A DNA stretch of 31,471 nucleotides from Vitrella brassicaformis CCMP3155. Lineage: Eukaryota > Protista > Chromerida. Where the stretch lies: contig CDMY01000680.1 of NCBI GenBank assembly GCA_001179505.1, positions 1-31,471 of the forward strand, in the 5' to 3' direction. Of the stretch, positions 481 through 24,328 are shown piece after piece. The notes below the pieces were generated by a model that ran no database searches, was not told where the DNA came from, and saw only the letters and a program-made list of their open reading frames with translations. The position numbers and the translations under genes are program-made. How positions within the stretch are numbered: the first letter of the stretch is position 1; each line of letters begins with the position of its first letter.

Positions 481-3400
481 ATGGAGCCGCGCTGCATCGG
501 CGAGCGGATGTTTCGGCCACACCGCGCCCAGCAGCTGGGCGCTCGCATGGACAACGCTGTTGCAGCGGGTGGTGCTTGTGGTGGTGGTGGTGGAGGTGGA
601 GGTGTTGCTGCCCTGCCGCCGCTGGATCATCATAATAATCACCAGGGCGGCAACTGCTGGGACCACCGGGCCCTCTCGGACAGCGCCTGCTCGCCCGACA
701 CCCACAGAGGCCACCCAACCTTCACCCCGGGGGCGGCATCAGCATCGGACCAGAACGGCTTCGCTCTGCCGTTCTTCCCCGGGGCACCCCTAGACGGCCA
801 CGGCCACGCTCATCATGGTCATGGCCGCCATAATCACCAGCAGCAGCAGCAGCAGCACACACCATCGCACCAGTACCAGCACGCACAGCATGTGCAGCAG
901 CAGCAGCAGCAGCAGCCTCAGCAGCCTCAGCTCCCGACGATAGTGGTCAAGAGTGAGAGTGAGGTGCCTGACGCTGCCACTGCAACACACCAGCAGCAGC
1001 AGCAGCCGCACAAAGGGCAGTGGGATGGGCTGGTAGAGGGCGGAGGGGAGTCGACGAGTGCCAGTGGGGCGGAGTGGACGCCCACCCCTGGTGCTGAGGG
1101 AGAGGGGGAGGGAGAGGGAGCGGGGGAGCGTGAGGGTGTCCAGGGGAATGTTGGCGAGTCTGAGGTGGAGAAGGTGGAGATCACACGGCCTGCAGACCTG
1201 CCACGAGACTGCAGTAAGCCAAGCCACAGAGAGACGATGAAGTGAAGCGCCGTTCCGAAGTCCATTCTTCATTCGCCATTTGTGTGTGTGTCTGTTGGTC
1301 TTGCCTTGCAGGTCTGCATGTCCGAGCGCGTGAAGACTCCGACTTCCCCTTTGAGCTGGTGCTAGAGTACCCCCTGCCCGAGGGCGTTCCCCACATCCCC
1401 ATCGCCGCCCCCCTCGAGCCACTGCCACCCAATCGCACCTCGTGGGAGCCAGGGTACATCCAGATCGTCGCGGAGACCCTGTTCGTGCAGCTGCGGCAGG
1501 CCGTCCCCGCCGCAGTGGCACCCCACCGAGTGCATGTCAAGACGGAGCCGACGGACGATGGGATGGGGGACGGGGGTATGGTGGATGAGGACCTGCATGC
1601 GGGGTCCAACAACACCGACGAGGAGCCGGCACTGGCGGCGGCACCGCTGTCCCCTCAGCTGCCGATGCCTGGCCACGGTGGCCACGGTGGGCACGGTCAG
1701 GCCCACGTCCATGGCAATGGTAACGCCCCCGCACGGACTGCGTCGGGGTCGTACGATGGCGCTTTCGACCATCACCGCCACCATCAGGACAGGGAGGCGC
1801 CCCCTGCTGCTGCAGGTGGGGGTGCTGGGGGTGGTGGTAGTGATGGTGCAGGTCCGCCAGTGGAGCCGGGTGTGTATTGGGGCCGGTATCTGCGAGGGCC
1901 GCCGATGCCCGTGCGTGTGGTGGACCTGCGGTATGCGACGGTGGGTTTGGGTGGTGAGTATGGCGATTGTATGCCAGAGGTTTTGCCGAGCCAGGATGCC
2001 GTCAGGAGAGGCCGATGCGTCTACTGCTACATTAGCGAAGACTAGTAAGCCACCGGACAGACAGACAGACGGACAAGCAAGAACAAAACCCACCACTGTG
2101 TGTGTCTCCGCAGCTACAAGCCCTTCGTCTTCACCTTTGAGAGCTTCATAGAGCATTACGCCGAGCACCAGCGGACATTCCTCCACGAAGCCTCCTTCCC
2201 CCCCGATGTCTTTGTCGAGGCCGCGCCGTCGCGCATGGCGTGTCTGCAGGAGGCCCTGAGGCACTTCTGGCGCGGCGGGCAGGGGGCCTGCCTCAAGTGC
2301 GGCCAGGCGGAGATGGTGAAGGGGCTCAGGGGGGAGGCCTTCTGCGGAATGTGCGATGGGTAACTTACTAAGGAGGAAGGAATGGCATACACAGAGCGTT
2401 CGTGGCATGGAGGGGTGGTGGGGCAGGAGAGATGTTTCGTTGTTGCGCTTTTGTTGCCTCCCTTCATCAGGGAGGCCCCCAACGACAGCATAGACGCCGC
2501 CCCACACCCACACTCTCACCCCCAGCCGCCTTCCATGCTCATGCGGCAGCCCCCGCGGCGCAGGTCCCGCCCCACCCACAACGCGCCCCATCTCCCTTCA
2601 CCACCCAACGCCCACACGCCCGGCAGCGGGATCGCCAAGCGCATCGGCACCTCCAAGCGAGGGCGGGATGTCGGCGGCGAGGATGGCGCGGGCAGCGGTC
2701 TGCAGATCTTGGCGTGGCGGCCCTGGAGCGAGAGCGAGATGGAGTACTATGTCAAGAGAGAGGACGAGTGCTACCGGTGAGGCCGACCATGAGAGGAACG
2801 AACAGAGAGAGGGAGAAGAGAGGAGAGAAATGCATTCATTGTGTCAATCGATCATTTGTGTGGTCTGTGTGTGGTGTGGTGTGGTGTAGGGATGTGCGCT
2901 GGTGTCGTGAGAGCTGGCTGTGCCACCACCCCGGCGCCCACGACCAGATCGCCGCCTTCCGTCGCAAGATGGAGAGCATGGCCATGCACACACACTCCCA
3001 GAACACATTCGGACCCACAGGTAAGGAATCCTTCCCCCTCTCCCCCTCCCCTCCAGGGCCCCTCCATCCATCCATCCATCTGTCTGTCTGTCTGTCTTTG
3101 TCTGTCTGTCTCTGCAGCCAAGACGGAGGCCACATTCACTCTGTACAAGCGTGTGGATCGTGTCCTTGCCAGCCGGCAGGTGGGCAGCTGTTTCGGCCAC
3201 CACCAGCACCACCACCAGCACCAGCAGCACCAGGGGCAGAACGTGCAGTACCTGGTCAAGTGGCGCCACCTGCCCTACTCCGAATGCACGTGGCATCACG
3301 CCGCGTCGCTCAACCATCCTGACGACCAAGCCGCCATCTCACGGTGGGTGAACAATCCTTGAAATCCTCCCCCCCTCTCTCTCTCTCGGTTCACATCCGT

Positions 3401-6400
3401 CCCCCTCCCTCCCCATGTGTATGTGTGTTGGCAGGCACGAGCACTTCAACTCTCGTCGTTCGGTGTGGTCGTTCCACGAGTTTGCGCAGGAGGTGGTGGG
3501 CGAGGACCGGTGGCAGGAGACGTGGCTGGCCGTCAAGGCCAAGTCCGAGCAGCACGCGCCCCTCTCACTCGTGCGCAGCCCAGAGCAGGCCGACAACTGC
3601 CCGCTGTGGCTGGAGGCCACGGCGCAGAAACTCTTCCGCGACGGCACGTACTTCCCTGCCATGGTAACTCTCACAGATACACACACGTATACGCACAGAG
3701 AGAAAGAAAGAAAGAAAGAAAGAAAGAGAGATGGGTGGGAGGAGAGGGACGAGGGTGGGATGTCCGTCGTGTGTTTTCCTGCAGTTTGACCCCTCTGTGG
3801 GCGATTTCCACGCTGCGATTCGGGAGGACGGCTTAACGCATGGCATCGTCGAGTACGACCGGCTGCACCGCCACCAGGTGGAGGGACTCCGGTCGATGCT
3901 GCACCAGGCCACCCAGCACAAAGGCACACTCGTGCAGTTCGACCAGCCCGGGATGGGCCGCAAAGCTATGGTCAGTGAGCAGGGGAGTGGTCGAGGGCGA
4001 GGGAGAGAGAGACAAGGCGCATCGTGGTGTGTGTATGTCTGGACCGCCCTCCCTCCCTCCCTCCCTCTCTGCGTGTGTGTTGTGTGTGTGTCTCGGTGTA
4101 GGTGGTTGTGACGATGGAGCATCTTCTGGAGCATCGGCGCCGCAGCGACGGGCGTGCTGCACATGGGCTGGTGGTGGCCCCGCACACCTCCCTCGACGGA
4201 TGGTGCCGCGAGTTCCAGAAATGGACGCCACACCTTAACGCCGTCACATTTGCCGGTAGATAAACACACCACCACACACCTTTCCCACAGCCCAATTCCC
4301 CTCCCACACGCACTCTCCCTCTCCCTCTGTGTCTGTGGGGGTGTCCATAGGCACATCGGCTGACCTGTCGGCGATCGCCAGGTACGAGCTGCAGTGGACG
4401 CACCCCTTCCTTGGCCCCTCCAAACGCGCCAGGACGTCCCATGCCCGGGCCGGCCTGGAGGGTCTGCAGAAGGCGGTCAAGGCTGACGTGGTGGTGTGTT
4501 CCCCGGAGAGTCTGGACAGCGACGAGTTTGCGATGCACCTGGGGGGCGGCAGGGTGGACTTCGCCGTGTGTGTGGTCGATGGACATGGGGCATGGAAGGT
4601 AGACATGGAGAGAGAGACGTATATGCTATGGAGAGAGACAGAGAGTCTGCAATGAGAATGTGTGTGTGGGGTTTCTGTCTGTCTGTCTGTCTGTCTGCAG
4701 GAGGGTGAGCGACTGGACGTCCTGTGTCGGCCGCTCCAGCAGGTCGTCCCGACGGCAAGCAGCACCAACATCCTCATCGCCCACCCCCAACACGACCCCC
4801 TCAACACCATCACCACCGCCACGCCTGAGGAGGTCTTCGCGACACTCGCCTTCATCGACCCCCACACATACACCTACCAGAGCAACCACAGCAGCAGCGG
4901 CAGCACCGGCTGGAGCGGCCCGGGGGGGCAGCCGCTGCTGGACCCCCACACACATGAGGGGTTCATGCAGCAGTATGGCGAGTTCCACCAGTATCCGTAA
5001 GCAGCTGAGCACTGAGGACGGATGGATGAATGGATGGATGGATGGATGGCGCGTGTGTGCGTGCGTGTCTGAAGGGACTTAGCGAGCCGCGTGCAGGAGG
5101 CCTTGCTGTCCTACGCGTTCAAACGGTCGGTACCCTCACAATCCCACACAATCGGTGCTTCATGTGTGTGTGTGTGTGTGTGTGTGCCTGTGTGGGTGAT
5201 GTGGTGTGTGGCAGTGAGCTGTCGCGTGTTTCGCGCCACCTGCCGGCCCAGCGTGTGCACGAAATGGTGGTGCCCATGACCGTGGCACAGAAGAGGGCCT
5301 ACGCAGCAGTCTACCAGATGTATGCAGCACACATACAGCACACGCAGCACTTACCAAGGGGCGCGCAAGAGGAGCTAGCTCTTCTCCGTGCTTCGTGTGC
5401 AGGTATGGCCATGAGTCGACTCAGCCCAACTGGCAGAACCATCTCGCCACCAAGGTGAAGTGTGTCAGCAAGGCCAGAGCAGCAACACACGGCGGGAGCT
5501 TTATCCCACTCTCTCTCTCTGTGTGTGTGTGTGTGTGTATGGGCAGCTGCGCGAGTGCTGCAACCACCCGCTGCAGATGGGCATCGAGAGCATCAGCTCG
5601 GCCATGAGACAGGGCGACATCCACCCCTCACTCAGACGCAGAGGTCACACACACACACACACACACACACGACACGCGACCGGCCACAATCTGTGTGTGG
5701 TGTGTGGTGCTTTCCTGACTGCAGCTGGCGAGTCCGAGGAGTCTCAGGAGGGCCGAGTGCTGCTGGAGACCTCCGGCAAGCTTGCCTTCCTCGGCAGGCT
5801 GCTGCCCGCGCTCAAACTGCAGAAGCGCAAAGTCATCCTCCTGTCGCAATTTGCCGAGGTCAGCCTGTCTGTCTGTCCTACTCAACGGCTGCACGGTGTG
5901 TGTGGAGTGTGGCGTGGTGTGGTGTGTGCAGACCTTGTCGCTACTCGAGGGTGGTGTGCTCAGCCCCAAAGGCTTTTACTGGGAGCGCCTTGACGTGCTC
6001 ATGGCACCAGAGGAGCGGCAGATGGCCATAAACCGGTGTGTCAGTGGGGAGCATGGCAGCACAGACAGACAGAGAGAGAGAGAGAGAGAGAGGGAGGGGA
6101 GGGGCGTGTGGGCATCCATCCATCCATCCTCCATCCATCCATCCATGTGTGTGCGTGATTGTTGTCCGAAAGGTTCAACGAGACTGACGAGACCTTCCTG
6201 CTGCTGTCGACCTTCGAAGCGGGTGCACACGGGGTGGACATCACCCCCGCCACGACCATCATACATATGGACCCCCCTGACTCCATCATCGGCCGCCCAT
6301 GCGTACGCAGCACAGCACAATGGCTGGCCATTTCCCCTTCACTGCATCCATGTCATGTGTGTGTTGTTGTGTTCGCTCATCGTCCATGTCATTAGGTGGG

Positions 6401-7637
6401 TGTCCGGTGTGAGTGCGTGGCGCAGACCCGCGAAGTTACCGTGTACCAGCTGGTGGCAAAGGGCAGCTACGAGGCCAAGATGCTGCGCATCGCCGCCAAC
6501 GCCGCCAGGGAGGGGCACGAGATGCTCCTGGCAGGGGACATCCGCCAGATGGTCAACGAGGGCATCCTCGTCGCCCTCACAGGTACCCTTTCCCCCGCCC
6601 CTCTCTCTCTCTCTGCGTGTTGTGTGTGCTTGATGTGGTGTGGTGTGGTGTGATGTGGTCTGTGTGCAGATGACCAGACGATAGAGCGGGAGGACAGGGC
6701 GTTCGGGCGGGCCTCTGTGCAGACCATTCTCCAGGGGCGTTTCGGCCAGCAGCAGACGGACGGCAGCAACGAAGACGACTCATGCTGGGAGCTGGGTGCG
6801 CAGGGAGAGAGGGAGGGTGTGTTGTTGGTCGGCAGGTCATGCCGTCTGTCTGTGTGTCTGTCTGTGTCTGCACCTCCAGGCAATAGTCGTGACCCAGCCT
6901 TTCTGCCGCGCGCCACTCTGGCGCTGGAGCAGTTCAACCCATCCCTCTCCATCAGCAGATGTGTGCCGTCCTTCAGGTAGCCCCCACACACCGCTCACTG
7001 CCCTCACACACAGGCCATTCATTCATCACCTCTCTTTCTGCCGTCCTCTGGCTCTCTCTCCACACACAGCCGCGAGGAGCGTCGCAGTCACGTGCCCGGC
7101 CTGCTGCCCCCTCCCCCTCCCCACTCCCACACACCCCACTACCCCTACACAGCCCCGCCACCACCAGCCCCCCACGCCCCTCTCACCCACACACCTCCCC
7201 CTGGGCGCAACTGCCCCCAAGGCGGCCGCAATCGTCGCTCTCGCCGCCAGCAGCATTTGGTCACCGTCAAGACCGAAGTCGGCCTGACAGAGCCGAGTGA
7301 GGCACCTGCGGCCGCACCTGCTGGACCTCCTGCCGCTACTCCTGCTGCGGGTCCGTCTGTGGGTCCGTCTGCACAGCAGCAGCAGTATCAGTACGGTGAG
7401 GTGTGGGAGGAGGTGGACGGGGTGCTCATGCCCAGGTTGGGGCTGGTGCCCGCTGACCCAGAGCCACTCGTGGTCGACGACGATGAGCCACAGCACCACC
7501 AAGAGCACCATGAAAACATGCAGCCGCCGCCGCAGCAGCAGCAGCAGTATCAGCAGCAACATCAGCATGAGATGCAGCAGCAGGTGCCATGTGAGGAGAT
7601 GAACGTGATGTCGGTCAAGCAGGAGGGGGCCGGATGA
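481..7637 (+). CDS. Multi-exon CHD-like protein: low-complexity N-terminus, Cys pairs, tandem chromodomains, SNF2-type two-lobe ATPase fold with degenerate catalytic motifs, Pro/Gln-rich tail
   Basis: Spliced translation gives chromodomain 1 (QILAWR..EYYVKREDECYRDVRW), chromodomain 2 (YKRVDRVLASR..QYLVKWRHLPYSECTW), SNF2 motif Ia (LVVAPHTSLDGWCREFQKW), EVFATLAFIDP, LRECCNHP, SGKLAFLGRLL..RKVILLSQF, FLLLSTFEAGAHGVDITPATTII and VTVYQLVAKGSYE. GT-AG introns checked in phase include 1214-1310 and 3971-4100. First ATG is at 481 and the stop of the last exon at 7637. Confidence 0.88.
5644..5724 (+). repeat. Representative intron with (CA)n at the 5' end and (TG)-rich tract at the 3' end; similar SSRs (CA/TG, GACA/TGTC, GA/TC, GGAT/ATCC, GAAA) fill most introns in the window
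   Basis: The intron reads GT-(CA)n (5646-5670)...ctgtgtgtggtgtgtggtg (5691-5709)...gactgcAG. Confidence 0.9.
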
Positions 7638-17833: not shown

Positions 17834-18170
17834 GGACGTCGGGAAGACAAGTGAAGTGGACGCCACGGATGCAGGGTGGGGTCTGGGGATGTGGGAGATG
17901 GGAGGGAGAGGCTGTCTTGTCTTGCCCCTCAGTCGTCAGACGTCGATGCTGACAGTTTTCCAGCTGCTGATTGTTTTCCTTCTTCTTGTGCGAGCTCAAA
18001 AAGAACTGCATGCTAAGCTCGCAGGTTGTGCTCAAAAGTTTTTGGGCTTCTGACAGAGCGAAGGCAACGCAGAGTGAAGGGTCCTCAAGCGGCTCCTTTC
18101 CCTCACTCATCGCCTCCGTCCGACCGGCCCTTCTCGTGGTGAGTTGCCTCGCCCCCTCGGTCAATTCGCG

Positions 18171-20259
18171 ATGCACAAGTACCGGCTTATATCCAAGAAG
18201 GGCGAGGGCACTTTCTCTGAGGTGCTCAAGGCGCAGAGCATCAAGACGGGTCGGTACGTCGCCATCAAGTGCATGAAGAACCAGTTCGAGAACCTCGACC
18301 AGGTCAACAGCCTTCGGGAGATTCAGGCCCTCCGCCGGCTGTCCCCCCACGCGCATATAGTCAAGCTGCACGAGGTGCTCTACGACGAGCCCACGGGGCG
18401 GCTGGCGCTGGTGTTCGAGCTAATGGAGATGAACATGTACGAGGCCATTCGGGGCCGGCGGCACTATCTGCCGGAGAGCAAGGTCAAGTACTACATGTGG
18501 CAGCTCATCAAGGCCATGGACCACATGCACCGCAACGGCATCTTCCACCGAGACATCAAACCTGAGAACATCCTCATACTCGAGGACACGCTCAAACTCG
18601 CCGACTTCGGCTCGTGTCGCGGCATTTGGTCCAAGCAGCCGTACACCGAGTACATCAGCACGAGATGGTACCGCGCGCCGGAGTGTTTGCTGACCGACGG
18701 GTATTACAACTATAAGATGGACATGTGGGGGGTCGGCTGCGTGCTCTTCGAGATCATGGCGCTCTTCCCGCTCTTCCCGGGCACCAACGAGCTCGACCAA
18801 ATACAGAAGATACACAATGTCCTCGGTGCGTCAGCAGCAGGGACAGAAGCACATAGAGAGGGGCCACACAGCATCGTGTCTCATGTGGATGGATCGATGG
18901 ATGCAGGGACTCCGCATCAGGACGTGTTGAACAAGTTCAAGGCCAAGGCGTCTCATCTGGATTTCAACTTCCCGTCAAAGGACGGCACGGGCATCGCCCG
19001 ACATCTGCCGCAGGCCAGCCCGGAGTGCATCGAGATTCTCACCCGGCTGCTGGCGTATAACCCCGATGAGCGCATCAGCGCCAGACAGGCGCTCAAACAC
19101 CCGTATTTCAAAGATCTGCGGTGAGGAGACACAGAAGAGGGAAGGGAGACAGGAACATTGACATGCAATCCATCTGTGTCTCTTGTATTCTCCGTGTTTT
19201 CAGTGATGCAGAGAAGGCTGCTCTCGGGCACATGGATCCCTCCTCTCTCCACCGGTCGTCGCGCACAGACAAGCAATCCTCCCACTCGTCGGCCCACCCT
19301 TCCCCGGGCAAGGCCTCGTCCAAACACACCGCCGAGAGCAAGAACACCGACACCCACCACGAGGACAGCACCAAGAAGGGACACCACGACAGCACATCGA
19401 CAAGCGACTCTCCCTCCCTGCTGCCGGACATCAAGCGCAAACAGGCGGCCGGGGGCGCGTTGCCGCTGCACGAGAACATCCCATCTCCCGTCCCACCACA
19501 CGAGCCGACGCACCACAAGACAGCGTCGTCACGGAGTGGGGGTCAGGAGACTATCAACACGGTGCTGGCGGAGACCCAGAGCAGCGCATTGTCGAGAGCA
19601 GGGGAGAAGGAGGAGGACGGGTCGACCATTCTGCCGCCGATCGGCCATGGCGGCAAGGGACATGTGGTGACAATGCCTGTGGGTCAGGGGGGGCTGGGTG
19701 TGAGTGGCCATGCGGCCACGGTCAAGCTGCCCACTGGTGCGTGGAAAGGGCACAAGGCCATGAGGGGCAAGGGGCATGGAGGACACCAACACGGTGAGCG
19801 AAACCGCACCACAAAACAGATGGATCGACCACGAGGCACATGTCTCCTTGTTGCTTGTGGTCAGGTTCCAATCTGGGCAGCACGGCCACATCCACTTTCT
19901 CTGTCCGCAGTGGTGCAGCGCTCCAATCAACCTCCCCCAACCATCCCTCCAACTACAAAAAAGGCCCCATCCACCAGCAGCATCAACAGCAGCAGCAGCC
20001 GTCCCACCAGCAGCCCACCTACTCACACCAGCAGCTTCAGCTTTCGCCCGAGAGCAGCAAGAAGCAGCAACAGATTCAGCTGTCGCCAGAGGGGGGCAAG
20101 CCGCAGGTTGGCACCAAGAGAGTGCACAAGGACCACCACAGAGACAGAGATAGAGACAGAGAGAGGGATCGGGAGAGGGAAAGGGAGAAGGATTCGTATT
20201 ACCATTCGCCTTATGCGGTGTATGCCACCAAGCCGAAGAGAGAGAGGCTGGTGGAGTGA
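18171..20259 (+). CDS. MOK: MOK/RAGE-like CMGC Ser/Thr kinase with a low-complexity C-terminal tail
   Basis: MHKYRLISKKGEGTFSEV, VAIKCMK, HRDIKPEN, DFG and activation loop KQPYTEYISTRWYRAPECLLTDGYY, typical of MOK. Exons 18171-18825, 18907-19120, 19204-~19793 and ~19864-20259; all catalytic motifs are intact. Confidence 0.92.
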
Positions 20260-20500
20260 CTATGATGGTGGCTGCTTGGTTGTTTGGTGGGGGGTCGATC
20301 GATGGATGGATGGATGGATGTATATGTGTGTGGCGGACACTTTGACTCTAGTGCGTAACCATATATGCATATCAAGGATGACTGTGTGTCAATCATTGAC
20401 CTCCTGGACAGAGTGATCAAGGTCTTTGCATCATCCGTTTGTGGTCTCGCACGCATCAAGAACATGGATGAATCCATGCACACAGCAGGCAGCCCCTCGT

Positions 20501-21772
20501 CTATTTTCGCACCAGCAGGCCTTTCCTTATCTTTTCCCACTGCACATCCGAGCGAAAGTGAGTGTACTTGTTGTGGAACCAGGTGTAGTGCGATGAATGA
20601 GGGTCAAACTCATCCCACTTCATATGTCGGCGCCAACGGCGGCCATGCTCTTTCTTGAGCCGATCGCATTCATAAAGGAAGGAGCACCATAGCTGAAAGT
20701 CCACCAGCTTGCACCCGAAAGGAGGGCAGCGTGATAAGGGAGAAGCGAGCTGCATGCAGTCATCATGACTTGCGACTTTCCACTCGACCAGCTGACCCTT
20801 CCTGTCCCGGTAGACGGCCCCCATTCCAAAGTGGTTCCTCAGCTTTTCGATGAGAACATGATTGCTCGCGTGCTGTGCGAGAGAGAACACGGCATGACAT
20901 TTTGGGGGCTTGTGTCGGACAGAGAAGCTCCCTTCTCCTGTGACAAAGCCCGAGAACCACTGCAATGTCTCTTCCCTCTCGGGCAGAATTCCTCCGTATG
21001 TGCTCTCGATTCCTGTCGGAATTGACGAAGATGCTTTCGAATTCATTTGCTGCCGGAGAGCCTCCGCTCGCTGCAATGCAGCCGCAGATGGCCGCCGAAA
21101 ACGAACCCCGCACTCATCGTAGAGCAATCGATAAGCCTCTATCCACTTCTTGTAGTTATATTGCTTGGTGGTCAAAAGGGGATAGCGCTCACACAACTCA
21201 ATCAGAGGGGCAACTCTTTTGCCAGATAGGACCAACGTCACACCATTATCCGTTCGGTCCATGTAGAGGCTGCCGTCTTCTCCCATCGAAACGCGCACCC
21301 GCTCAAGAAGGTGGAGCTCTCGAAGATTCATTTCGAGGTCGAAGCGAGGATAAAAGTACTGACCGCGATTCCCTGCCATGCGAAAACATCCCTCGCCATC
21401 GATAAGGCCGACAATCTGGCGTGGCAGAAGTGGTCGGCGGTCTTGGTTTGCAAAGACCAGACACCCTGTAGCCTCCTGCCTCGTCCAATTGCCGACGCCG
21501 ACGCCACTGGCAAGAAATCTGCGGCTGCTGAGAAAGCCGACCGGCTGACGAGAAGCCCCAGCTGATGAAGCCGATAGGTAAAGGGGCGGAAAGGCTAGCA
21601 GCGGGCGCACAGGAGAGTCTTGAAGAGACCCGGAGGCGAGGCCCGCGAAGGCGCTTTGCAGATGCCTCGTGGACGTTCCACAGAAGCCATGGGCAGATGA
21701 GCTTGAAACTCGACGGACGGCTGCTCCTAGCAGACGGCTTCCCAACGGAAAGAGCATCGGGACACTGATCAT
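20501..21772 (-). CDS. Intronless double-motif LAGLIDADG homing-endonuclease-family protein with a ~95-aa N-terminal mitochondrial-type presequence
   Basis: Motif 1 QIVGLIDGEGCF (~21380-21418) and motif 2 WFSGFVTGEGSF (~20924-20959). Each domain ends with typical LAGLIDADG elements (YPLLTTKQYNY; PPFGCKLVDFQLW). The N-terminus is rich in Arg/Ser/Ala/Leu with almost no acidic residues and includes SSRRFLAS. ATG is at 21772 or 21757; the ORF track's 21778 start is a GTG. Confidence 0.9.
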   Translation of the reverse strand: MISVPMLFPLGSRLLGAAVRRVSSSSAHGFCGTSTRHLQSAFAGLASGSLQDSPVRPLLAFPPLYLSASSAGASRQPVGFLSSRRFLASGVGVGNWTRQEATGCLVFANQDRRPLLPRQIVGLIDGEGCFRMAGNRGQYFYPRFDLEMNLRELHLLERVRVSMGEDGSLYMDRTDNGVTLVLSGKRVAPLIELCERYPLLTTKQYNYKKWIEAYRLLYDECGVRFRRPSAAALQRAEALRQQMNSKASSSIPTGIESTYGGILPEREETLQWFSGFVTGEGSFSVRHKPPKCHAVFSLAQHASNHVLIEKLRNHFGMGAVYRDRKGQLVEWKVASHDDCMQLASPLSRCPPFGCKLVDFQLWCSFLYECDRLKKEHGRRWRRHMKWDEFDPHSSHYTWFHNKYTHFRSDVQWEKIRKGLLVRK

Positions 21773-21833
21773 GATCACGCAACGGGGGCGAGACTGGGGG
21801 CGACGGTGATTTTAGCTTGCAGCAGACAAAAAA

Positions 21834-22648
21834 ATGGCTTCAACACTCCGTCGTCGCTCTCTGCTGGACCCCGGCAGCCTCCCCCCAGCCGGTCTCTATC
21901 GCAGACATCGCATCCCGCCGGCACAGCACATGGCACGATGCAGCACCTCCACACAGCTGCTCTACAAGGCTGATGAAGAGAAGCTGAGGGAGCTTGCAAT
22001 GAGGAAGGAGGAGGCTGAGAAGACAGAGGAGGAGCGGCCCCATCGTATGAGGGTGTCGGCGTCGTTGCCGGACCTGCGTGTTCCCAAGCCGACAGCGCGT
22101 CCGACCTTGAGGCGAGAAGACAGGTGTCCGTGGCTCTTTCAGCCTCCCGAGACCACAAATGGGCTGACACTGACACGCTCCAGGGGTCAGTATGCGTCAT
22201 CTGCAGTGCTGGTGAGGGAGCCCATCCGCCCAGAAGTCCTTTTGCCGGCCGGGGGTCTGTCAAGCTATCAGTTTGCAAGCACGAGGATGGTCATGAAAGG
22301 GGCTCTGCCAAATGCAGACAGTATCATCGTCACAAACGTGAGAAGACACACGTGCACAATGCTCTTTTCCACAGTGCATGCATTCATCTGTGTGTCTCTG
22401 CTGTGCAGAAGTGGCGCCCGCCCACGTTCACGCCAATTCGTGGCACGTGGAGCTTCCTGCGCTTTGCAGACAAGCCCACGGGGCTGCCGTCATCGCACTA
22501 TCGTCGTTCTACGCGGCTGCCGACAAGACGCAGCTATGACAGCCGCATCCATCCCGCGGCGACCAAGACGATAGCCAAGATGGAGCGGGAGCATGCGGCA
22601 GCGATTGCCAGGACGGCAGAGAGATGTCTCAGTAGAAGAGCCAGATAG
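21834..22648 (+). CDS. Hypothetical protein, 2 exons
   Basis: ATG in an A-rich context (aaaaaaATGG). Exon 1 (to ~22337, ..IIVTN) splices in phase 0 across a GTGAG..CAG intron to KWRPPTFTP..MEREHAAAIARTAERCLSRRAR*. No recognisable domain. Confidence 0.65.
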
Positions 22649-23044
22649 AGAGATAGACAATGGGTCTCTGTGCATATGTGCGCGGAGCGTCGATTGGCAG
22701 GAGAATTCAGGTGTCTTCTTATCGGAATTCCTAATTTCGTATGTCTGCTCACTGTACCACGCAACGAGATACACACACACATGCCAGCTAGCGTATGTAG
22801 CGTCAAAAAGAAGCAGAGGAGGAGCATGATAGCAGCAGATGAGAGGGCCGGTCGTTGGGAAGGCACAAAAGGATGATCAAAAATCAGCACGATTGACTGA
22901 TTGACTGAGCCCTGTCTTCCACCACATCCACACCACAAAGACCACAACAGGACAGGCCATCGCGTGAAGTTTTACTGCAATAAAGCGACACAACCAAAGC
23001 ACCGCATCCGGGGAAAAACTGACTATGCTTGCTCACACTCTGCG

Positions 23045-24328
23045 TCACACACGATAGTCACTACCCTCCCCCTTTGACACGTCAGTCATCTCGGTCTCCC
23101 CTCCGCCAGATGCCGTGCTTGCGGCGCCGTCATCTGTACCGCTTGTTGTGCCCTGGACAGGCCCGACGGTCATGGCCTGCACGGCCATCTGCTGTCGCAT
23201 GCTCGGGTGGTGCAGATTGACGAAAGGGGCCGCGTGCTCCACCAGAGGTGCACTGGCGCCCCACACGTACCCACGGTTGTGGTCCATGAATGCCTGCAGG
23301 CAGACACAGACACACAGACACAGAATGACACGCGAATGATGTGTCATGTGTCATGTTGGTATGGTATCTCGGTATCTCGACCACTGACCACTGTGCCACA
23401 TGCCGGTGAGAAAACGAATGGACGTTTCCAGAAGCTGCCTGTGCGCAGCATCACTCCGCCCCGCGTGTCGGTCACAGTTCCGAATCTTTGCGGTCGGACA
23501 CAAGGCACATTGAAGATGGGAAGGAAGCAGCACAAGAAACAGCTCCACGTGCCTGACATGGATGCAGTGAACACACACACACACACACACGCAGAGACAC
23601 TAACTCATCGCCTGTCATGCCGCTCATGGTGTCTGTGACCCACCCACCTATCGGTTCGATAGCCGTGATGTCCGTGAACTTGAGGGTCTTCCTGAACGCC
23701 ACCGTCTTCAGCTCGAAGGCATCCTCCGTCCGCAGCACCACCAGCGGCGTCTCCAGCACACCAAACACGGCGCGCACGAACATCCCCGCGCCAATCGCTG
23801 CCCAGAGGAAGGTAAGCACAACGTGGCCGGCGATCTGAACGGCGTCCGTAGACTCGAGCACAACATCTCTCGTGTGGACGGCGGCAGCCGACGCGCCCAG
23901 CAGCACCCACGTGCTGAAGATCAGCCACAGGCCGAGATACCAACCTGCACGTGACGTGTGCAAAGGAAATGACGGACAGGTGCTGTTGCTGTCCCTCTAT
24001 ATGCGCTTACCATATGCCAATTTCTCTGAGGTGGACGTCCAGATCGGATACGTCTGTGTGGCGCCACCTGACAAGATGATGGGTAGACGGGCAGGTCCTC
24101 CGTAAGTGTTTCTCCACCTCCACGTGCACCACCAGAGAAGCATGAAGTTGTTCGGGGTAGCGAGTAGGAATGTGACGAGGCCGGAAGAAGCATTCAGTGA
24201 CGACGGAGGTCTCCTGAACACGCAAGCTTGGGTCCACACCCGTCGCAACTCATGTCTCGTAGATCTCGCGCGCGAAACTCGGTCTCCGCTCTAACTCGCA
24301 GTGCTTCCTCACCGCCGCGCGAAGACAT
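23045..24328 (-). CDS. Hypothetical membrane protein: 2 predicted TM helices followed by a beta-rich, possibly PH-like segment
   Basis: GWYLGLWLIFSTWVLLGASAAA and IAGHVVLTFLWAAIGAGMFVRAVFG are hydrophobic. They are followed by PLVVLRTEDAFELKTVAFRKTLKFTDITAIEPI|GTWSCFLCC..GVMLRTGSFWKRPFVFSP|AFMDH.. The 5' exon and start are uncertain. Confidence 0.65.

What the first reader, a model, noticed from the sequence alone, without database searches (positions are those of the whole stretch)
20501..21772. Free-standing nuclear LAGLIDADG endonuclease that appears addressed to the mitochondrion
Seen in sequence: a ~420-aa ORF with two LAGLIDADG motifs that both keep the acidic metal-binding residue (GLIDGEG, GFVTGEG). 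It is not inside an intron or intein, and it is preceded by a basic, acid-poor N-terminal extension with an RRFL|AS R-2/R-3-like cleavage motif. Established: such enzymes are normally encoded within organellar group I introns or inteins. Domesticated nuclear examples include yeast HO and plant organelle splicing factors such as OTP51. Characterised myzozoan mitochondrial genomes are tiny and often fragmented, with few genes, split rRNAs and no group I introns. Inference: this may be a domesticated nuclease or maturase imported into a mitochondrion that has no homing intron. It could act in mtDNA fragmentation/recombination, NUMT generation, or folding of fragmented rRNA, which would be an undescribed organellar system.
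Basis: partly seen in the sequence, partly recalled or inferred. Interest (0 to 1): 0.85.

Follow-up and report, generated by a model that had tools for sequence, protein, structure and literature searches.

The report
Nuclear LAGLIDADG nuclease with mitochondrial-type leader
This alga, most likely Vitrella, has an ordinary nuclear gene for a DNA-cutting enzyme of a type normally encoded inside organelle introns; it carries a mitochondrial-type address tag, belongs to an undescribed gene family shared with colpodellids and dinoflagellates, and is a candidate for the enzyme that breaks and reshuffles their unusual mitochondrial DNA.

Summary
On the minus strand, 20504-21772 (stop 20501-20503) is an intact, intron-free 423-aa ORF. 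It matches Pfam LAGLIDADG_1 (E 2e-28, two stretches) and I-OnuI-type meganucleases by sequence (E 2e-16) and by predicted fold.

- **Active site:** both catalytic glutamates (E127, E280) and both flanking lysines (K203, K355) are present.
- **Leader:** residues 1-87 are Arg-rich (9 R, 0 K), acid-poor and predicted disordered. They have no signal-peptide-like hydrophobic core and end in an R-F-L|A motif shared with two paralogues.
- **Nuclear context:** one neighbour is a spliced protein-kinase gene, and GC3 is like nuclear DNA. DNA contigs from three samples span the locus, and RNA contigs cover most of the ORF unspliced.
- **New here:** the gene belongs to a clade (100/100 support) with Vitrella paralogues, two Alphamonas transcripts, an Amphidinium fragment and four dinoflagellate-like metagenome genes. 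The tree mirrors the species tree. Catalytic residues are invariant, while the DNA-contacting sheets vary most.
- **Selection:** two Vitrella paralogues give dN/dS of about 0.3, although both carry frame-breaking indels.

Best reading (0.5): a host-retained, mitochondrion-imported site-specific DNA endonuclease. Localisation and activity are untested. Five other first-reader notes in this genome, none followed up, flag LAGLIDADG genes on other DNA. I found no paper describing the family.

The parts
20501..21772 (-). Complete intron-free ORF, 423 codons plus TAG stop, for a double-motif LAGLIDADG protein
   Evidence: ORF and sequence; Pfam PF00961, E 2e-28, 2 stretches; I-OnuI family, E 2e-16. 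RNA-run contigs cover most of it (depth falls to 0.6 over 21560-21743) and no splice joint is seen inside it.
21512..21772 (-). Presequence-like N-terminal extension (aa 1-87) ending in RRFL|AS (aa 84-89), a candidate R-3 processing site
   Evidence: before the conserved G-C there are 9 R, 0 K, 1 D and 1 E. There is an amphipathic stretch at aa 13-23 (hydrophobic moment 0.73), and the highest 12-residue hydropathy is only 1.47; pLDDT is below 50 over aa 1-97; the R-F-L-(A/S) motif aligns with Vitrella paralogues P0001 and P0007. Cleavage and import are inferred.
21425..21481 (-). Family-specific segment before domain 1 (aa 98-116) holding the invariant G103-C104
   Evidence: G103, C104 and L115 are invariant in all full-length family members; among the 152 proteins then held, the motif occurs in eight of the nine family members and in one other LAGLIDADG protein (P0150). 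Its function is unknown, and the model is weak there (pLDDT about 57).
21122..21424 (-). LAGLIDADG domain 1 (aa 117-217). Motif 1 is at 21383-21415 with catalytic E127; the active-site lysine K203 (PLxTxK motif) is at 21164-21166
   Evidence: alignment to I-OnuI variants; alpha-beta-beta-alpha-beta-beta-alpha, pLDDT above 90; D125, E127, G128, F130, T201 and K203 invariant.
20978..21121 (-). Inter-domain linker (aa 218-265) with the invariant M243-N244
20624..20977 (-). LAGLIDADG domain 2 plus a long C-terminal helix (aa 266-383). Motif 2 is at 20924-20959 with catalytic E280; lysine K355 (GxKxxDF motif) is at 20708-20710
   Evidence: W272, S274, G275, F276, G279, E280, G281, F283, G353, K355, W362 and W380 invariant.
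20504..20623 (-). Family-specific C-terminal tail (aa 384-423) with the invariant W398 and N401
   Evidence: The tail is conserved with the Vitrella paralogue tail and with MMETSP transcript P0004 (49% identity). Model confidence is low.
21773..21833 (.). Very short divergent intergenic region. The neighbouring + strand transcript contig starts at 21827 and its ATG is at 21834; an in-frame TAA at 21812-21814 closes the LAGLIDADG frame upstream
18144..20416 (+). Convergent neighbour: a spliced eukaryotic protein-kinase gene, which shows the nuclear context
   Evidence: Pkinase, E 2e-65, for 18144-19121; GT..AG joints 19119/19203 and 19792/19864 in RNA contigs.

Best explanation
This is a genuine, transcribed, intron-free nuclear gene of a chromerid alga, most likely Vitrella brassicaformis. 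It encodes a monomeric two-domain LAGLIDADG protein of the I-OnuI type with a complete catalytic centre.

It belongs to a previously undescribed nuclear gene family. The family was inherited vertically from the common ancestor of chrompodellids and dinoflagellates and has duplicated within lineages.

Proposed mechanism:
1. The precursor is imported into the mitochondrion through an Arg-rich, acid-poor presequence of about 87 aa and processed near RRFL|AS (inferred).
2. The mature protein of about 336 aa folds as a pseudo-dimer. Its two LAGLIDADG helices present E127 and E280 for divalent-metal binding, flanked by K203 and K355 (shown by alignment and a predicted model).
3. Its beta-sheet saddle binds a long asymmetric DNA site and makes a double-strand break (established for the fold, inferred here).
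4. Such breaks in mtDNA feed recombination-dependent repair or replication. This would contribute to the fragmented, recombining mitochondrial genomes of these lineages (inferred).

A nuclear-encoded enzyme cannot spread by homing into organelle DNA. Its long retention therefore implies a benefit to the host.
For: **Gene and fold**
- Pfam and PDB sequence matches.
- AF2 model with pLDDT above 90 across aa 110-385.
- Foldseek top hits are I-PnoMI, I-OnuI and I-SmaMI at E about 1e-17, TM by target 0.70-0.80.

**Nuclear and native**
- Spliced neighbours, one of them a kinase gene.
- GC3 is 0.60, against 0.66 for the neighbouring exon.
- Contigs from runs X1 and X3 (different samples and studies) span 18800-23563, apart from a 70-base simple repeat (20131-20200) that the tool skips.

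**Transcribed**
- RNA run X7 covers the ORF at depth 2-8, against 0.04 in the silent bin 18800-18983. Introns are spliced out of the neighbours.

**Family**
- The clade has 99 support among 116 LAGLIDADG representatives and 100/100 in a careful tree.
- The topology is (Vitrella x3 + Alphamonas x2) and (Amphidinium + 4 metagenome genes), matching the species phylogeny.

**Constraint**
- E127, E280, K203 and K355 are invariant.
- The LAGLIDADG helices are the most conserved parts (0.55-0.59 pairwise identity) and the beta3-beta4 sheets the least (0.15-0.22), as expected for nucleases with different targets.
- dN/dS is 0.32 and 0.30 between two Vitrella paralogues, and 0.17 over their presequence.

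**Targeting**
- Leader composition, no signal-peptide-like core, and basic acid-poor N-termini in all relatives.
- Alphamonas keeps two copies, although colpodellids have no known plastid genome (PMC6722601).

**Context**
- The scrambled, recombining state of mtDNA is reported for dinoflagellates, Chromera and Vitrella, and no intron-like elements are known flanking alveolate mitochondrial genes (PMC8554336).
Against: - No localisation predictor or experiment was available, so the presequence call rests on composition only.
- Dinoflagellate-type members have only 13-20 residues before the conserved G-C motif.
- RNA depth falls to 0.6 over 21560-21743, the presequence region. The contigs carry no strand information, and the convergent kinase gene could contribute reads at the 3' end.
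- Keeping the catalytic residues does not discriminate well: 107 of 112 non-family representatives also keep both acids, and maturases such as I-AniI keep them too.
- Two Vitrella paralogues carry frame-breaking indels, so not every copy is needed.
- No target site is known.
- No member was seen from apicomplexans, including coccidians with scrambled mtDNA. This weakens a simple link to mtDNA architecture.
- I could not verify from held papers that the Vitrella plastid genome lacks group I introns.
Confidence: 0.5

Rival explanations
1. It is an organelle-imported RNA-binding factor derived from a LAGLIDADG maturase. It would help fold, join or stabilise mitochondrial RNAs, such as fragmented rRNA pieces or fused and trans-spliced transcripts, and would not cut DNA.
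For: LAGLIDADG proteins can act as maturases. The best-known nuclear-encoded organellar example, OTP51, is a splicing factor (PMC2758277, PMC8393795). Myzozoan mitochondria depend on many imported RNA-binding proteins to assemble ribosomes from very short rRNAs (PMC11742926). The leader and the Alphamonas argument fit this reading as well as the nuclease one.
Against: No group I introns or intron-like elements are known in alveolate mtDNA (PMC8554336). OTP51 has lost the endonuclease residues (PMC2758277), whereas here E127, E280, K203 and K355 are invariant. The Toxoplasma mitoribosome paper and the Perkinsus complexome paper do not mention endonuclease, homing or LAGLIDADG proteins. The variable beta-sheets do not fit one conserved RNA target.
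Confidence: 0.2
2. It acts outside the mitochondrion. It could be a nuclear site-specific endonuclease used by the host, in the way yeast uses HO, with the basic disordered N-terminus serving as a nuclear or nucleolar signal. Alternatively it is a plastid protein whose signal-peptide exon was missed.
For: HO shows that a domesticated LAGLIDADG enzyme can work in the nucleus (PMC7282813). The protein is very basic (pI 9.4-9.7). The ORF start lies only about 55 bp from the neighbouring transcript, so the 5' gene model is not independently verified. The first 12 residues are mildly hydrophobic.
Against: The leader is Arg-rich with no Lys, acid-poor and Ser/Ala/Leu-rich, which is typical of matrix presequences rather than Lys/Arg-cluster nuclear signals. 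The paralogue presequence is under purifying selection and shares the R-F-L|S/A motif. An in-frame stop lies 13 codons upstream of the ATG, and no minus-strand splice joint is seen there. No Hint or zinc-finger domain of the HO/VDE type is present. Alphamonas keeps the family without a plastid genome (PMC6722601).
Confidence: 0.15
3. It is a non-functional relic: a former organellar homing-endonuclease gene copied into the nucleus and decaying slowly, with an ORF that is intact by chance.
For: Two paralogues on CDMY01000385 have frame-breaking indels. This exact ORF is absent from public protein sets. Expression is low. A nuclear insertion of a mitochondrial homing endonuclease that is dead and silent is documented in Ustilago (PMC7593156).
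Against: The family topology mirrors the chrompodellid/dinoflagellate split, which implies very long vertical retention. There are 35 invariant residues, including the catalytic four. dN/dS is about 0.3, also in the presequence. Codon composition is nuclear-like. The frame is open for 423 codons and is transcribed. Unlike the Ustilago case, the start codon and active site are intact.
Confidence: 0.12
4. It is a contaminant or a mis-assembled insert of fungal or algal organelle DNA.
For: The closest characterised relatives are fungal mitochondrial enzymes.
Against: Contigs from runs of different samples and studies cross both junctions into spliced nuclear genes at even depth. GC is 55% and GC3 60%, unlike AT-rich organelle homing-endonuclease genes. 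All Trp codons read in the standard code. The nearest relatives are other myzozoan nuclear or transcript sequences, not fungal ones.
Confidence: 0.01

Closest known systems
I-OnuI / I-SmaMI / I-PnoMI / I-LtrI-type monomeric LAGLIDADG homing endonucleases of fungal mitochondria
   Same: Same two-domain fold (Foldseek E about 1e-17, TM by target 0.70-0.80; sequence E 2e-16). Both catalytic acids are present, as are both lysines of the PLxTxK and GxKxxDF motifs. By position these lysines correspond to those mutated in PDB 5e5s and 5e63; I did not check this residue by residue.
   Different: Only about 20% identical. It is encoded in the nucleus, not in an organellar group I intron, so it cannot home. 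It carries a leader of about 87 aa, a conserved G-C segment before domain 1 and a conserved Trp-rich C-terminal tail. It forms its own clade.
OTP51 (plant nuclear gene; PPR plus two LAGLIDADG motifs; plastid ycf3 intron 2 splicing factor)
   Same: A nuclear-encoded, organelle-targeted protein derived from a LAGLIDADG enzyme and retained for host use (PMC2758277, PMC8393795).
   Different: OTP51 has PPR repeats and has lost the endonuclease residues, and it acts on group II introns in plastids. This protein has no PPR or other added Pfam domain, keeps the catalytic residues, has a mitochondrial-type leader, and lives in lineages with no known mitochondrial introns.
Yeast HO endonuclease (domesticated from WHO/VDE-like elements)
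   Same: A host-domesticated LAGLIDADG nuclease encoded by a free-standing nuclear gene that makes a programmed double-strand break (PMC7282813).
   Different: HO derives from an intein-type element with Hint and zinc-finger parts and acts in the nucleus. This protein is of the intron-ORF (PF00961) type with an organellar-type leader and none of those domains.
Endo.SceI / ENS2 of yeast mitochondria (from my own knowledge, not checked in a paper here)
   Same: A LAGLIDADG-type endonuclease that works in the mitochondrial matrix on mtDNA and stimulates recombination rather than classical intron homing. It is the closest functional analogue of the proposed mechanism.
   Different: The catalytic subunit ENS2 is encoded in the mitochondrial genome and works with mtHsp70. 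Here the gene is nuclear and the product would need to be imported.
Nuclear insertion of a mitochondrial homing endonuclease in Ustilago maydis (UMAG_11064)
   Same: An organelle-type homing-endonuclease gene found in a nuclear genome (PMC7593156).
   Different: The Ustilago case is a GIY-YIG gene. It is recent, strain-specific, keeps mitochondrial codon usage, has a mutated active site and is not transcribed. This gene is ancient, has nuclear-like composition, is intact and is transcribed.

Membership tests
Double-motif LAGLIDADG (PF00961) endonuclease fold | Two LAGLIDADG motifs in one chain, each starting an alpha-beta-beta-alpha-beta-beta-alpha domain | tested here: met
   Pfam, 2 stretches, E 2e-28. 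The AF2 model has that element order twice. Foldseek PDB E about 1e-17.
Double-motif LAGLIDADG (PF00961) endonuclease fold | An acidic catalytic residue at the end of each motif; both must be acidic for cleavage (10.1101/2022.12.06.519325) | tested here: met
   E127 and E280 align to the E/D of I-OnuI variants and are invariant in the family.
Homing endonuclease in the functional sense (mobile element) | Encoded within a group I intron or intein, or free-standing in the genome it cuts, so that cleavage copies the gene | tested here: not met
   A free-standing nuclear gene between spliced nuclear genes, with no intein or intron context. If it is exported to an organelle it cannot home.
Homing endonuclease in the functional sense (mobile element) | Site-specific double-strand cleavage of a target of about 20 bp | not testable with these tools
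   Needs recombinant protein and substrate DNA.
OTP51-type organellar splicing factor | PPR repeats fused to LAGLIDADG motifs that have lost the endonuclease residues | tested here: not met
   PF00961 is the only significant Pfam family; PPE-PPW is sub-threshold at E 0.18. The catalytic residues are retained.
HO/VDE-type domesticated nuclease | Hint (intein) domain and, for HO, a C-terminal zinc finger | tested here: not met
   No such Pfam match. The fold hits are intron-ORF type enzymes.
Mitochondrial matrix presequence proteins | N-terminal Arg-rich, acid-poor, amphipathic, unstructured leader without an ER signal peptide, and an R-2/R-3 processing motif | tested here: met
   9 R, 0 K, 1 D, 1 E; hydrophobic moment 0.73 at aa 13-23; highest 12-residue hydropathy 1.47; RRFL|AS at aa 84-89. 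Disordered in the model. This rests on composition only.
Mitochondrial matrix presequence proteins | Demonstrated import or localisation | not testable with these tools
   No TargetP or MitoFates here. No organelle proteome of Vitrella was found.
Myzozoan nuclear LAGLIDADG family (defined here) | Clade membership, plus the G-C motif about 18 aa before motif 1, the M-N linker motif, and the C-terminal W...W..N tail | tested here: met
   100/100 clade. G103, C104, M243, N244, W380, W398 and N401 are invariant.

The most novel reading that the evidence does not exclude
Myzozoans (chrompodellids and dinoflagellates) use a family of nuclear-encoded, mitochondrion-imported meganucleases with diversifying DNA-recognition surfaces. 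These make programmed site-specific breaks in mtDNA. The breaks would drive the recombination-dependent replication, fragmentation and scrambling that set their mitochondrial genomes apart. This would be a host-controlled organelle-genome editing system descended from a homing endonuclease.
Probability: 0.3. Interest if true: 0.85.

Novelty: new variant of a known kind. Interest (0 to 1): 0.66.

Why it matters
The mitochondrial genomes of dinoflagellates, chromerids and coccidians are fragmented, scrambled and highly recombinogenic, and no enzyme responsible for this has been identified. A conserved nuclear gene family for catalytically intact LAGLIDADG enzymes with mitochondrial-type leaders gives a concrete, testable candidate.

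It would also be a third, independent way of domesticating a LAGLIDADG enzyme, beside HO (a nuclear switch) and OTP51 (a plastid splicing factor). It would be an imported organellar nuclease with no intron to serve.

If active, these compact monomeric enzymes with naturally diversified recognition sheets could also serve as new meganuclease scaffolds. If the family proves to be absent from apicomplexans, its loss would be informative about how their mtDNA is maintained.

Tried and rejected
- **Word-indexed searches.** With the protein, with a 5-member profile and with P0003, these were swamped by generic LAGLIDADG words. They added only Vitrella P0001 and two metagenome members (P0191, P0192). 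They say little about absence elsewhere.
- **Exhaustive HMMER search.** It listed only the best 150 of 736 hits. No apicomplexan, Chromera, Perkinsus or Symbiodiniaceae member appeared among the 20 hits whose source I looked up (10 had none on record), and of the other listed hits only P0150 carries the G-C motif. This is weak evidence of absence, because this window's own gene is itself unannotated.
- **JGI metagenome scans.** There were no close orthologues, so I could not compute dN/dS for this exact gene. The 80 distant loci are generic organellar genes. L015 looked promising but is an AT-rich mitochondrial-type gene.
- **ESM Atlas and AFDB cluster searches.** Only fungal mitochondrial clusters and Vitrella P0001 came back.
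- **Literature.** No paper links LAGLIDADG to nuclear genes of apicomplexans, chromerids, colpodellids or dinoflagellates. The mitoribosome and complexome papers do not mention such proteins. The plastid-genome paper I wanted for intron content is not held.
- **Intron explanation for the paralogue frame breaks.** Rejected, because the alignment to this protein leaves no room for an intron of 60 nt or more.
- **Mobile-element idea.** Rejected, because paralogue homology stops at the ORF ends.
- **TGA=Trp (mitochondrial code) in the metagenome members.** Rejected. The single TGA lies in a spurious 5' extension, and all conserved Trp codons are TGG.
Full report
**1. The observation**

The minus strand carries an open frame from the ATG at 21772 to the TAG at 20503-20501, 423 codons in all. 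A GTG lies two codons upstream, and an in-frame TAA at 21814-21812 closes the frame.

Pfam LAGLIDADG_1 matches at E 2e-28 in two stretches. A sequence search of the PDB gives 62 matches, best E 2e-16. Nearly all are I-OnuI, I-SmaMI, I-PnoMI, I-LtrI, I-GzeII or I-AniI-type enzymes, over aa 110-366. The glutamates of GLIDGEG (E127) and GFVTGEG (E280) sit on the catalytic E/D of I-OnuI variants.

The lysines of the PLxTxK motif (K203) and the GxKxxDF motif (K355) are also present. By position they correspond to the active-site lysines mutated in I-SmaMI entries 5e5s and 5e63 (titles). I did not verify that mapping residue by residue.

An AlphaFold2 model built on a 130-sequence alignment has pLDDT above 90 through aa 110-385. 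It shows the alpha-beta-beta-alpha-beta-beta-alpha order twice. Residues 1-103 are disordered. Foldseek returns I-PnoMI, I-OnuI and I-SmaMI at E about 1e-17, with TM by target of 0.70-0.80.

**2. Nuclear, native and transcribed**

- **Genome identity.** Earlier notes of this scan name the genome Vitrella. The nearest relatives of the ORF are two genes on Vitrella brassicaformis CCMP3155 contig CDMY01000385.
- **Neighbours.** The convergent + strand neighbour is a protein-kinase gene (Pkinase, E 2e-65).
- **RNA evidence.** One run behaves as RNA. Its contigs skip GT..AG introns at 19119/19203, 19792/19864 and 22337/22409. It has depth 0.04 in a silent bin and covers the LAGLIDADG ORF at depth 2-8 with no joint inside it.
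- **Caveats on the RNA evidence.** The contigs carry no strand. Depth falls to 0.6 over 21560-21743. The 3' end may share reads with the kinase gene.
- **Assembly.** Contigs from runs of different samples cross both flanks at even depth, so this is not a mis-assembly or a contaminant.
- **Composition.** GC3 is 0.60, against 0.66 for the neighbouring exon, so this is not a recent organelle transfer.
- **Annotation.** The exact protein is absent from a collection of 15 billion sequences. The gene is therefore apparently unannotated.

**3. The leader**

Before the first family-conserved residues (G103, C104) lie 102 residues with 9 Arg, 0 Lys, 1 Asp and 1 Glu. The first acidic residue is D52. There is an amphipathic stretch at aa 13-23, and no 12-residue window exceeds a hydropathy of 1.47, so there is no signal-peptide-like core.

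RRFL|AS at aa 84-89 fits an R-3 processing motif. The R-F-L-(A/S) string aligns with the much shorter leaders of Vitrella paralogues P0001 and P0007. Their leader evolves under dN/dS 0.17.

The Alphamonas homologues have classic basic leaders. The dinoflagellate-type members have only 13-20 basic residues before the G-C motif, with stops just upstream.

In chromerids, plastid import requires a signal peptide plus a transit peptide, whereas a transit peptide alone is read as mitochondrial (method in PMC4501334). This is compositional evidence only.

**4. A family, not a singleton**

An exhaustive HMMER search, with source look-ups and a follow-up search, gave these relatives that share the extras:

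| Source | Members |
|---|---|
| Vitrella | P0001, P0007, and MMETSP transcript fragment P0004 |
| Alphamonas edax | two complete transcripts, P0005 and P0006 |
| Amphidinium carterae | fragment P0018 |
| Metagenome contigs | four intron-free genes: P0003 and P0013 (both from sample ERZ25074608), P0191 and P0192 |

The two metagenome loci I read (P0003, P0013) have about 48% GC and use the standard code.

Among 116 LAGLIDADG representatives these sequences form one clade (SH-aLRT 99). In a careful tree the clade has 100/100 support. It splits into Vitrella plus Alphamonas (91/84) and Amphidinium plus the metagenome genes (99/95). That is the species phylogeny, with duplications inside each lineage. 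The simplest history is one acquisition before chrompodellids and dinoflagellates diverged, followed by vertical descent.

Thirty-five positions are invariant in seven full-length members. They include D125, E127, K203, E280 and K355, the G-C pair, an M-N pair in the linker, and W380, W398 and N401 in the tail.

Conservation is highest in the LAGLIDADG helices and lysine motifs (0.48-0.59). It is lowest in the beta3-beta4 sheets that contact nucleic acid in this fold (0.15-0.22). That is the pattern of enzymes keeping their chemistry while changing their targets.

Retention of the acids is not by itself discriminating, because 107 of 112 outgroup representatives also keep both. It is still notable for a gene that cannot home, given that degenerate intron-encoded copies commonly lose them (10.1101/2022.12.06.519325).

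**5. Birth and death of copies**

The two paralogues lie 135 kb apart on CDMY01000385 and are 87% identical in DNA.

- One shifts frame by a single base after the second motif.
- The other has several frame-breaking indels and an in-frame deletion in domain 1.
- The parts before and after the breaks nevertheless give dN/dS of 0.32 and 0.30, and the tail of one is in a transcriptome (P0004).

So the breaks are either recent or, for the single-base one, possibly an assembly error. The window copy is the intact member.

Five other first-reader notes in this genome flag LAGLIDADG genes on other pieces. Two of them are described as intron-containing and catalytically dead. None had a follow-up that I could see, and I could not map them onto the loci I fetched.

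**6. What it most likely does**

A nuclear-encoded enzyme exported to an organelle cannot copy its own gene by cutting. Long vertical retention, purifying selection and an invariant active site therefore point to host use.

Colpodellids have no known plastid genome, yet Alphamonas expresses two copies (PMC6722601). The common substrate should therefore be mitochondrial, or nuclear.

Alveolate mitochondrial genomes have no known introns or intron-like elements. Those of dinoflagellates, Chromera and Vitrella are expanded, fragmented and scrambled, possibly through extensive recombination (PMC8554336).

I therefore favour an imported site-specific DNA endonuclease whose breaks feed mtDNA recombination or replication (0.5). 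The alternatives are:

- an RNA-binding, maturase-like role (0.2);
- action in another compartment (0.15);
- a slowly decaying relic (0.12);
- a contaminant (0.01).

Steps shown: gene, fold, active-site residues, family, nuclear context and RNA coverage. Steps inferred: import, processing site, DNA cleavage and biological role.

**7. Comparison and novelty**

By fold it is a member of the PF00961 double-motif LAGLIDADG enzymes. It fails the genomic-context criterion of a homing endonuclease.

- It differs from OTP51, which has PPR repeats and has lost the endonuclease residues (PMC2758277).
- It differs from HO, which has an intein-type ancestry and acts in the nucleus (PMC7282813).
- It differs from the dead nuclear insertion in Ustilago (PMC7593156).
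- Functionally, the nearest analogue I know is yeast Endo.SceI (from my own knowledge). That enzyme is mtDNA-encoded.

I found no paper describing nuclear LAGLIDADG genes in myzozoans. UniProt carries only automatic names for two Vitrella paralogues. I rate this a new variant of a known kind, namely a domesticated LAGLIDADG protein, with interest of about 0.66.

Noticed in passing
L001:4001-5201 (Vitrella CDMY01000385, 261009-262209): Paralogue P0001. The reading frame shifts by one base about 20 codons after the second LAGLIDADG motif. The annotated 271-aa protein is therefore truncated, and the conserved C-terminal part continues in another frame (ORF 4698-5201). This is either a young pseudogene or an assembly error.
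   Followed up: partly
L004:3001-4097 (Vitrella CDMY01000385, about 135 kb from L001): Paralogue P0007. It has in-frame deletions of 9 and 27 nt in domain 1 and several frame-breaking indels after the second motif. Even so, dN/dS against L001 is about 0.3 on both sides of the break, and its C-terminal ORF is identical to MMETSP transcript P0004.
   Followed up: partly
window 21773-21833: The LAGLIDADG start codon and the start of the divergent neighbour's transcript contig (21827; its ATG is at 21834) are only about 55 bp apart. This is either an extremely compact bidirectional promoter or overlapping 5' ends.
   Followed up: no
window 21827-24209: A single RNA contig (X7, record 26) carries a GT..AG joint (22337/22409) and two CT..AC joints (23551/23647 and 23942/24009). 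This means two convergent spliced genes with overlapping 3' ends, or a chimeric contig.
   Followed up: no
window 24152-24213: A short element with very high depth (610 against about 43 in run X1) and many loose ends in all DNA runs. It is a high-copy repeat at which contigs break.
   Followed up: no
window 18144-20416 (+): A spliced protein-kinase gene (Pkinase, E 2e-65) with a long low-complexity, Ser/Pro/His-rich C-terminal region and an Arg/Asp/Glu dipeptide repeat near 20131-20200. The reads tool skipped that stretch as a repeat.
   Followed up: partly
L002:8001-9062 and L003:820-1824 (ENA ERZ25074608): One metagenome assembly holds at least two intron-free family members (P0003, P0013), on low-coverage contigs of about 48% GC whose other called genes have no Pfam hits. 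Their close relatives P0191 and P0192 are on ENA contigs whose sample I did not look up. This is probably a dinoflagellate nuclear genome. The gene caller read an upstream TGA as Trp in P0003, and the true start is probably the Met 11 codons downstream.
   Followed up: partly
window 2703-6460: Another first-reader note on this window (s1-205762) proposes a CHD-type remodeller with an inactivated ATPase. I did not examine it.
   Followed up: no
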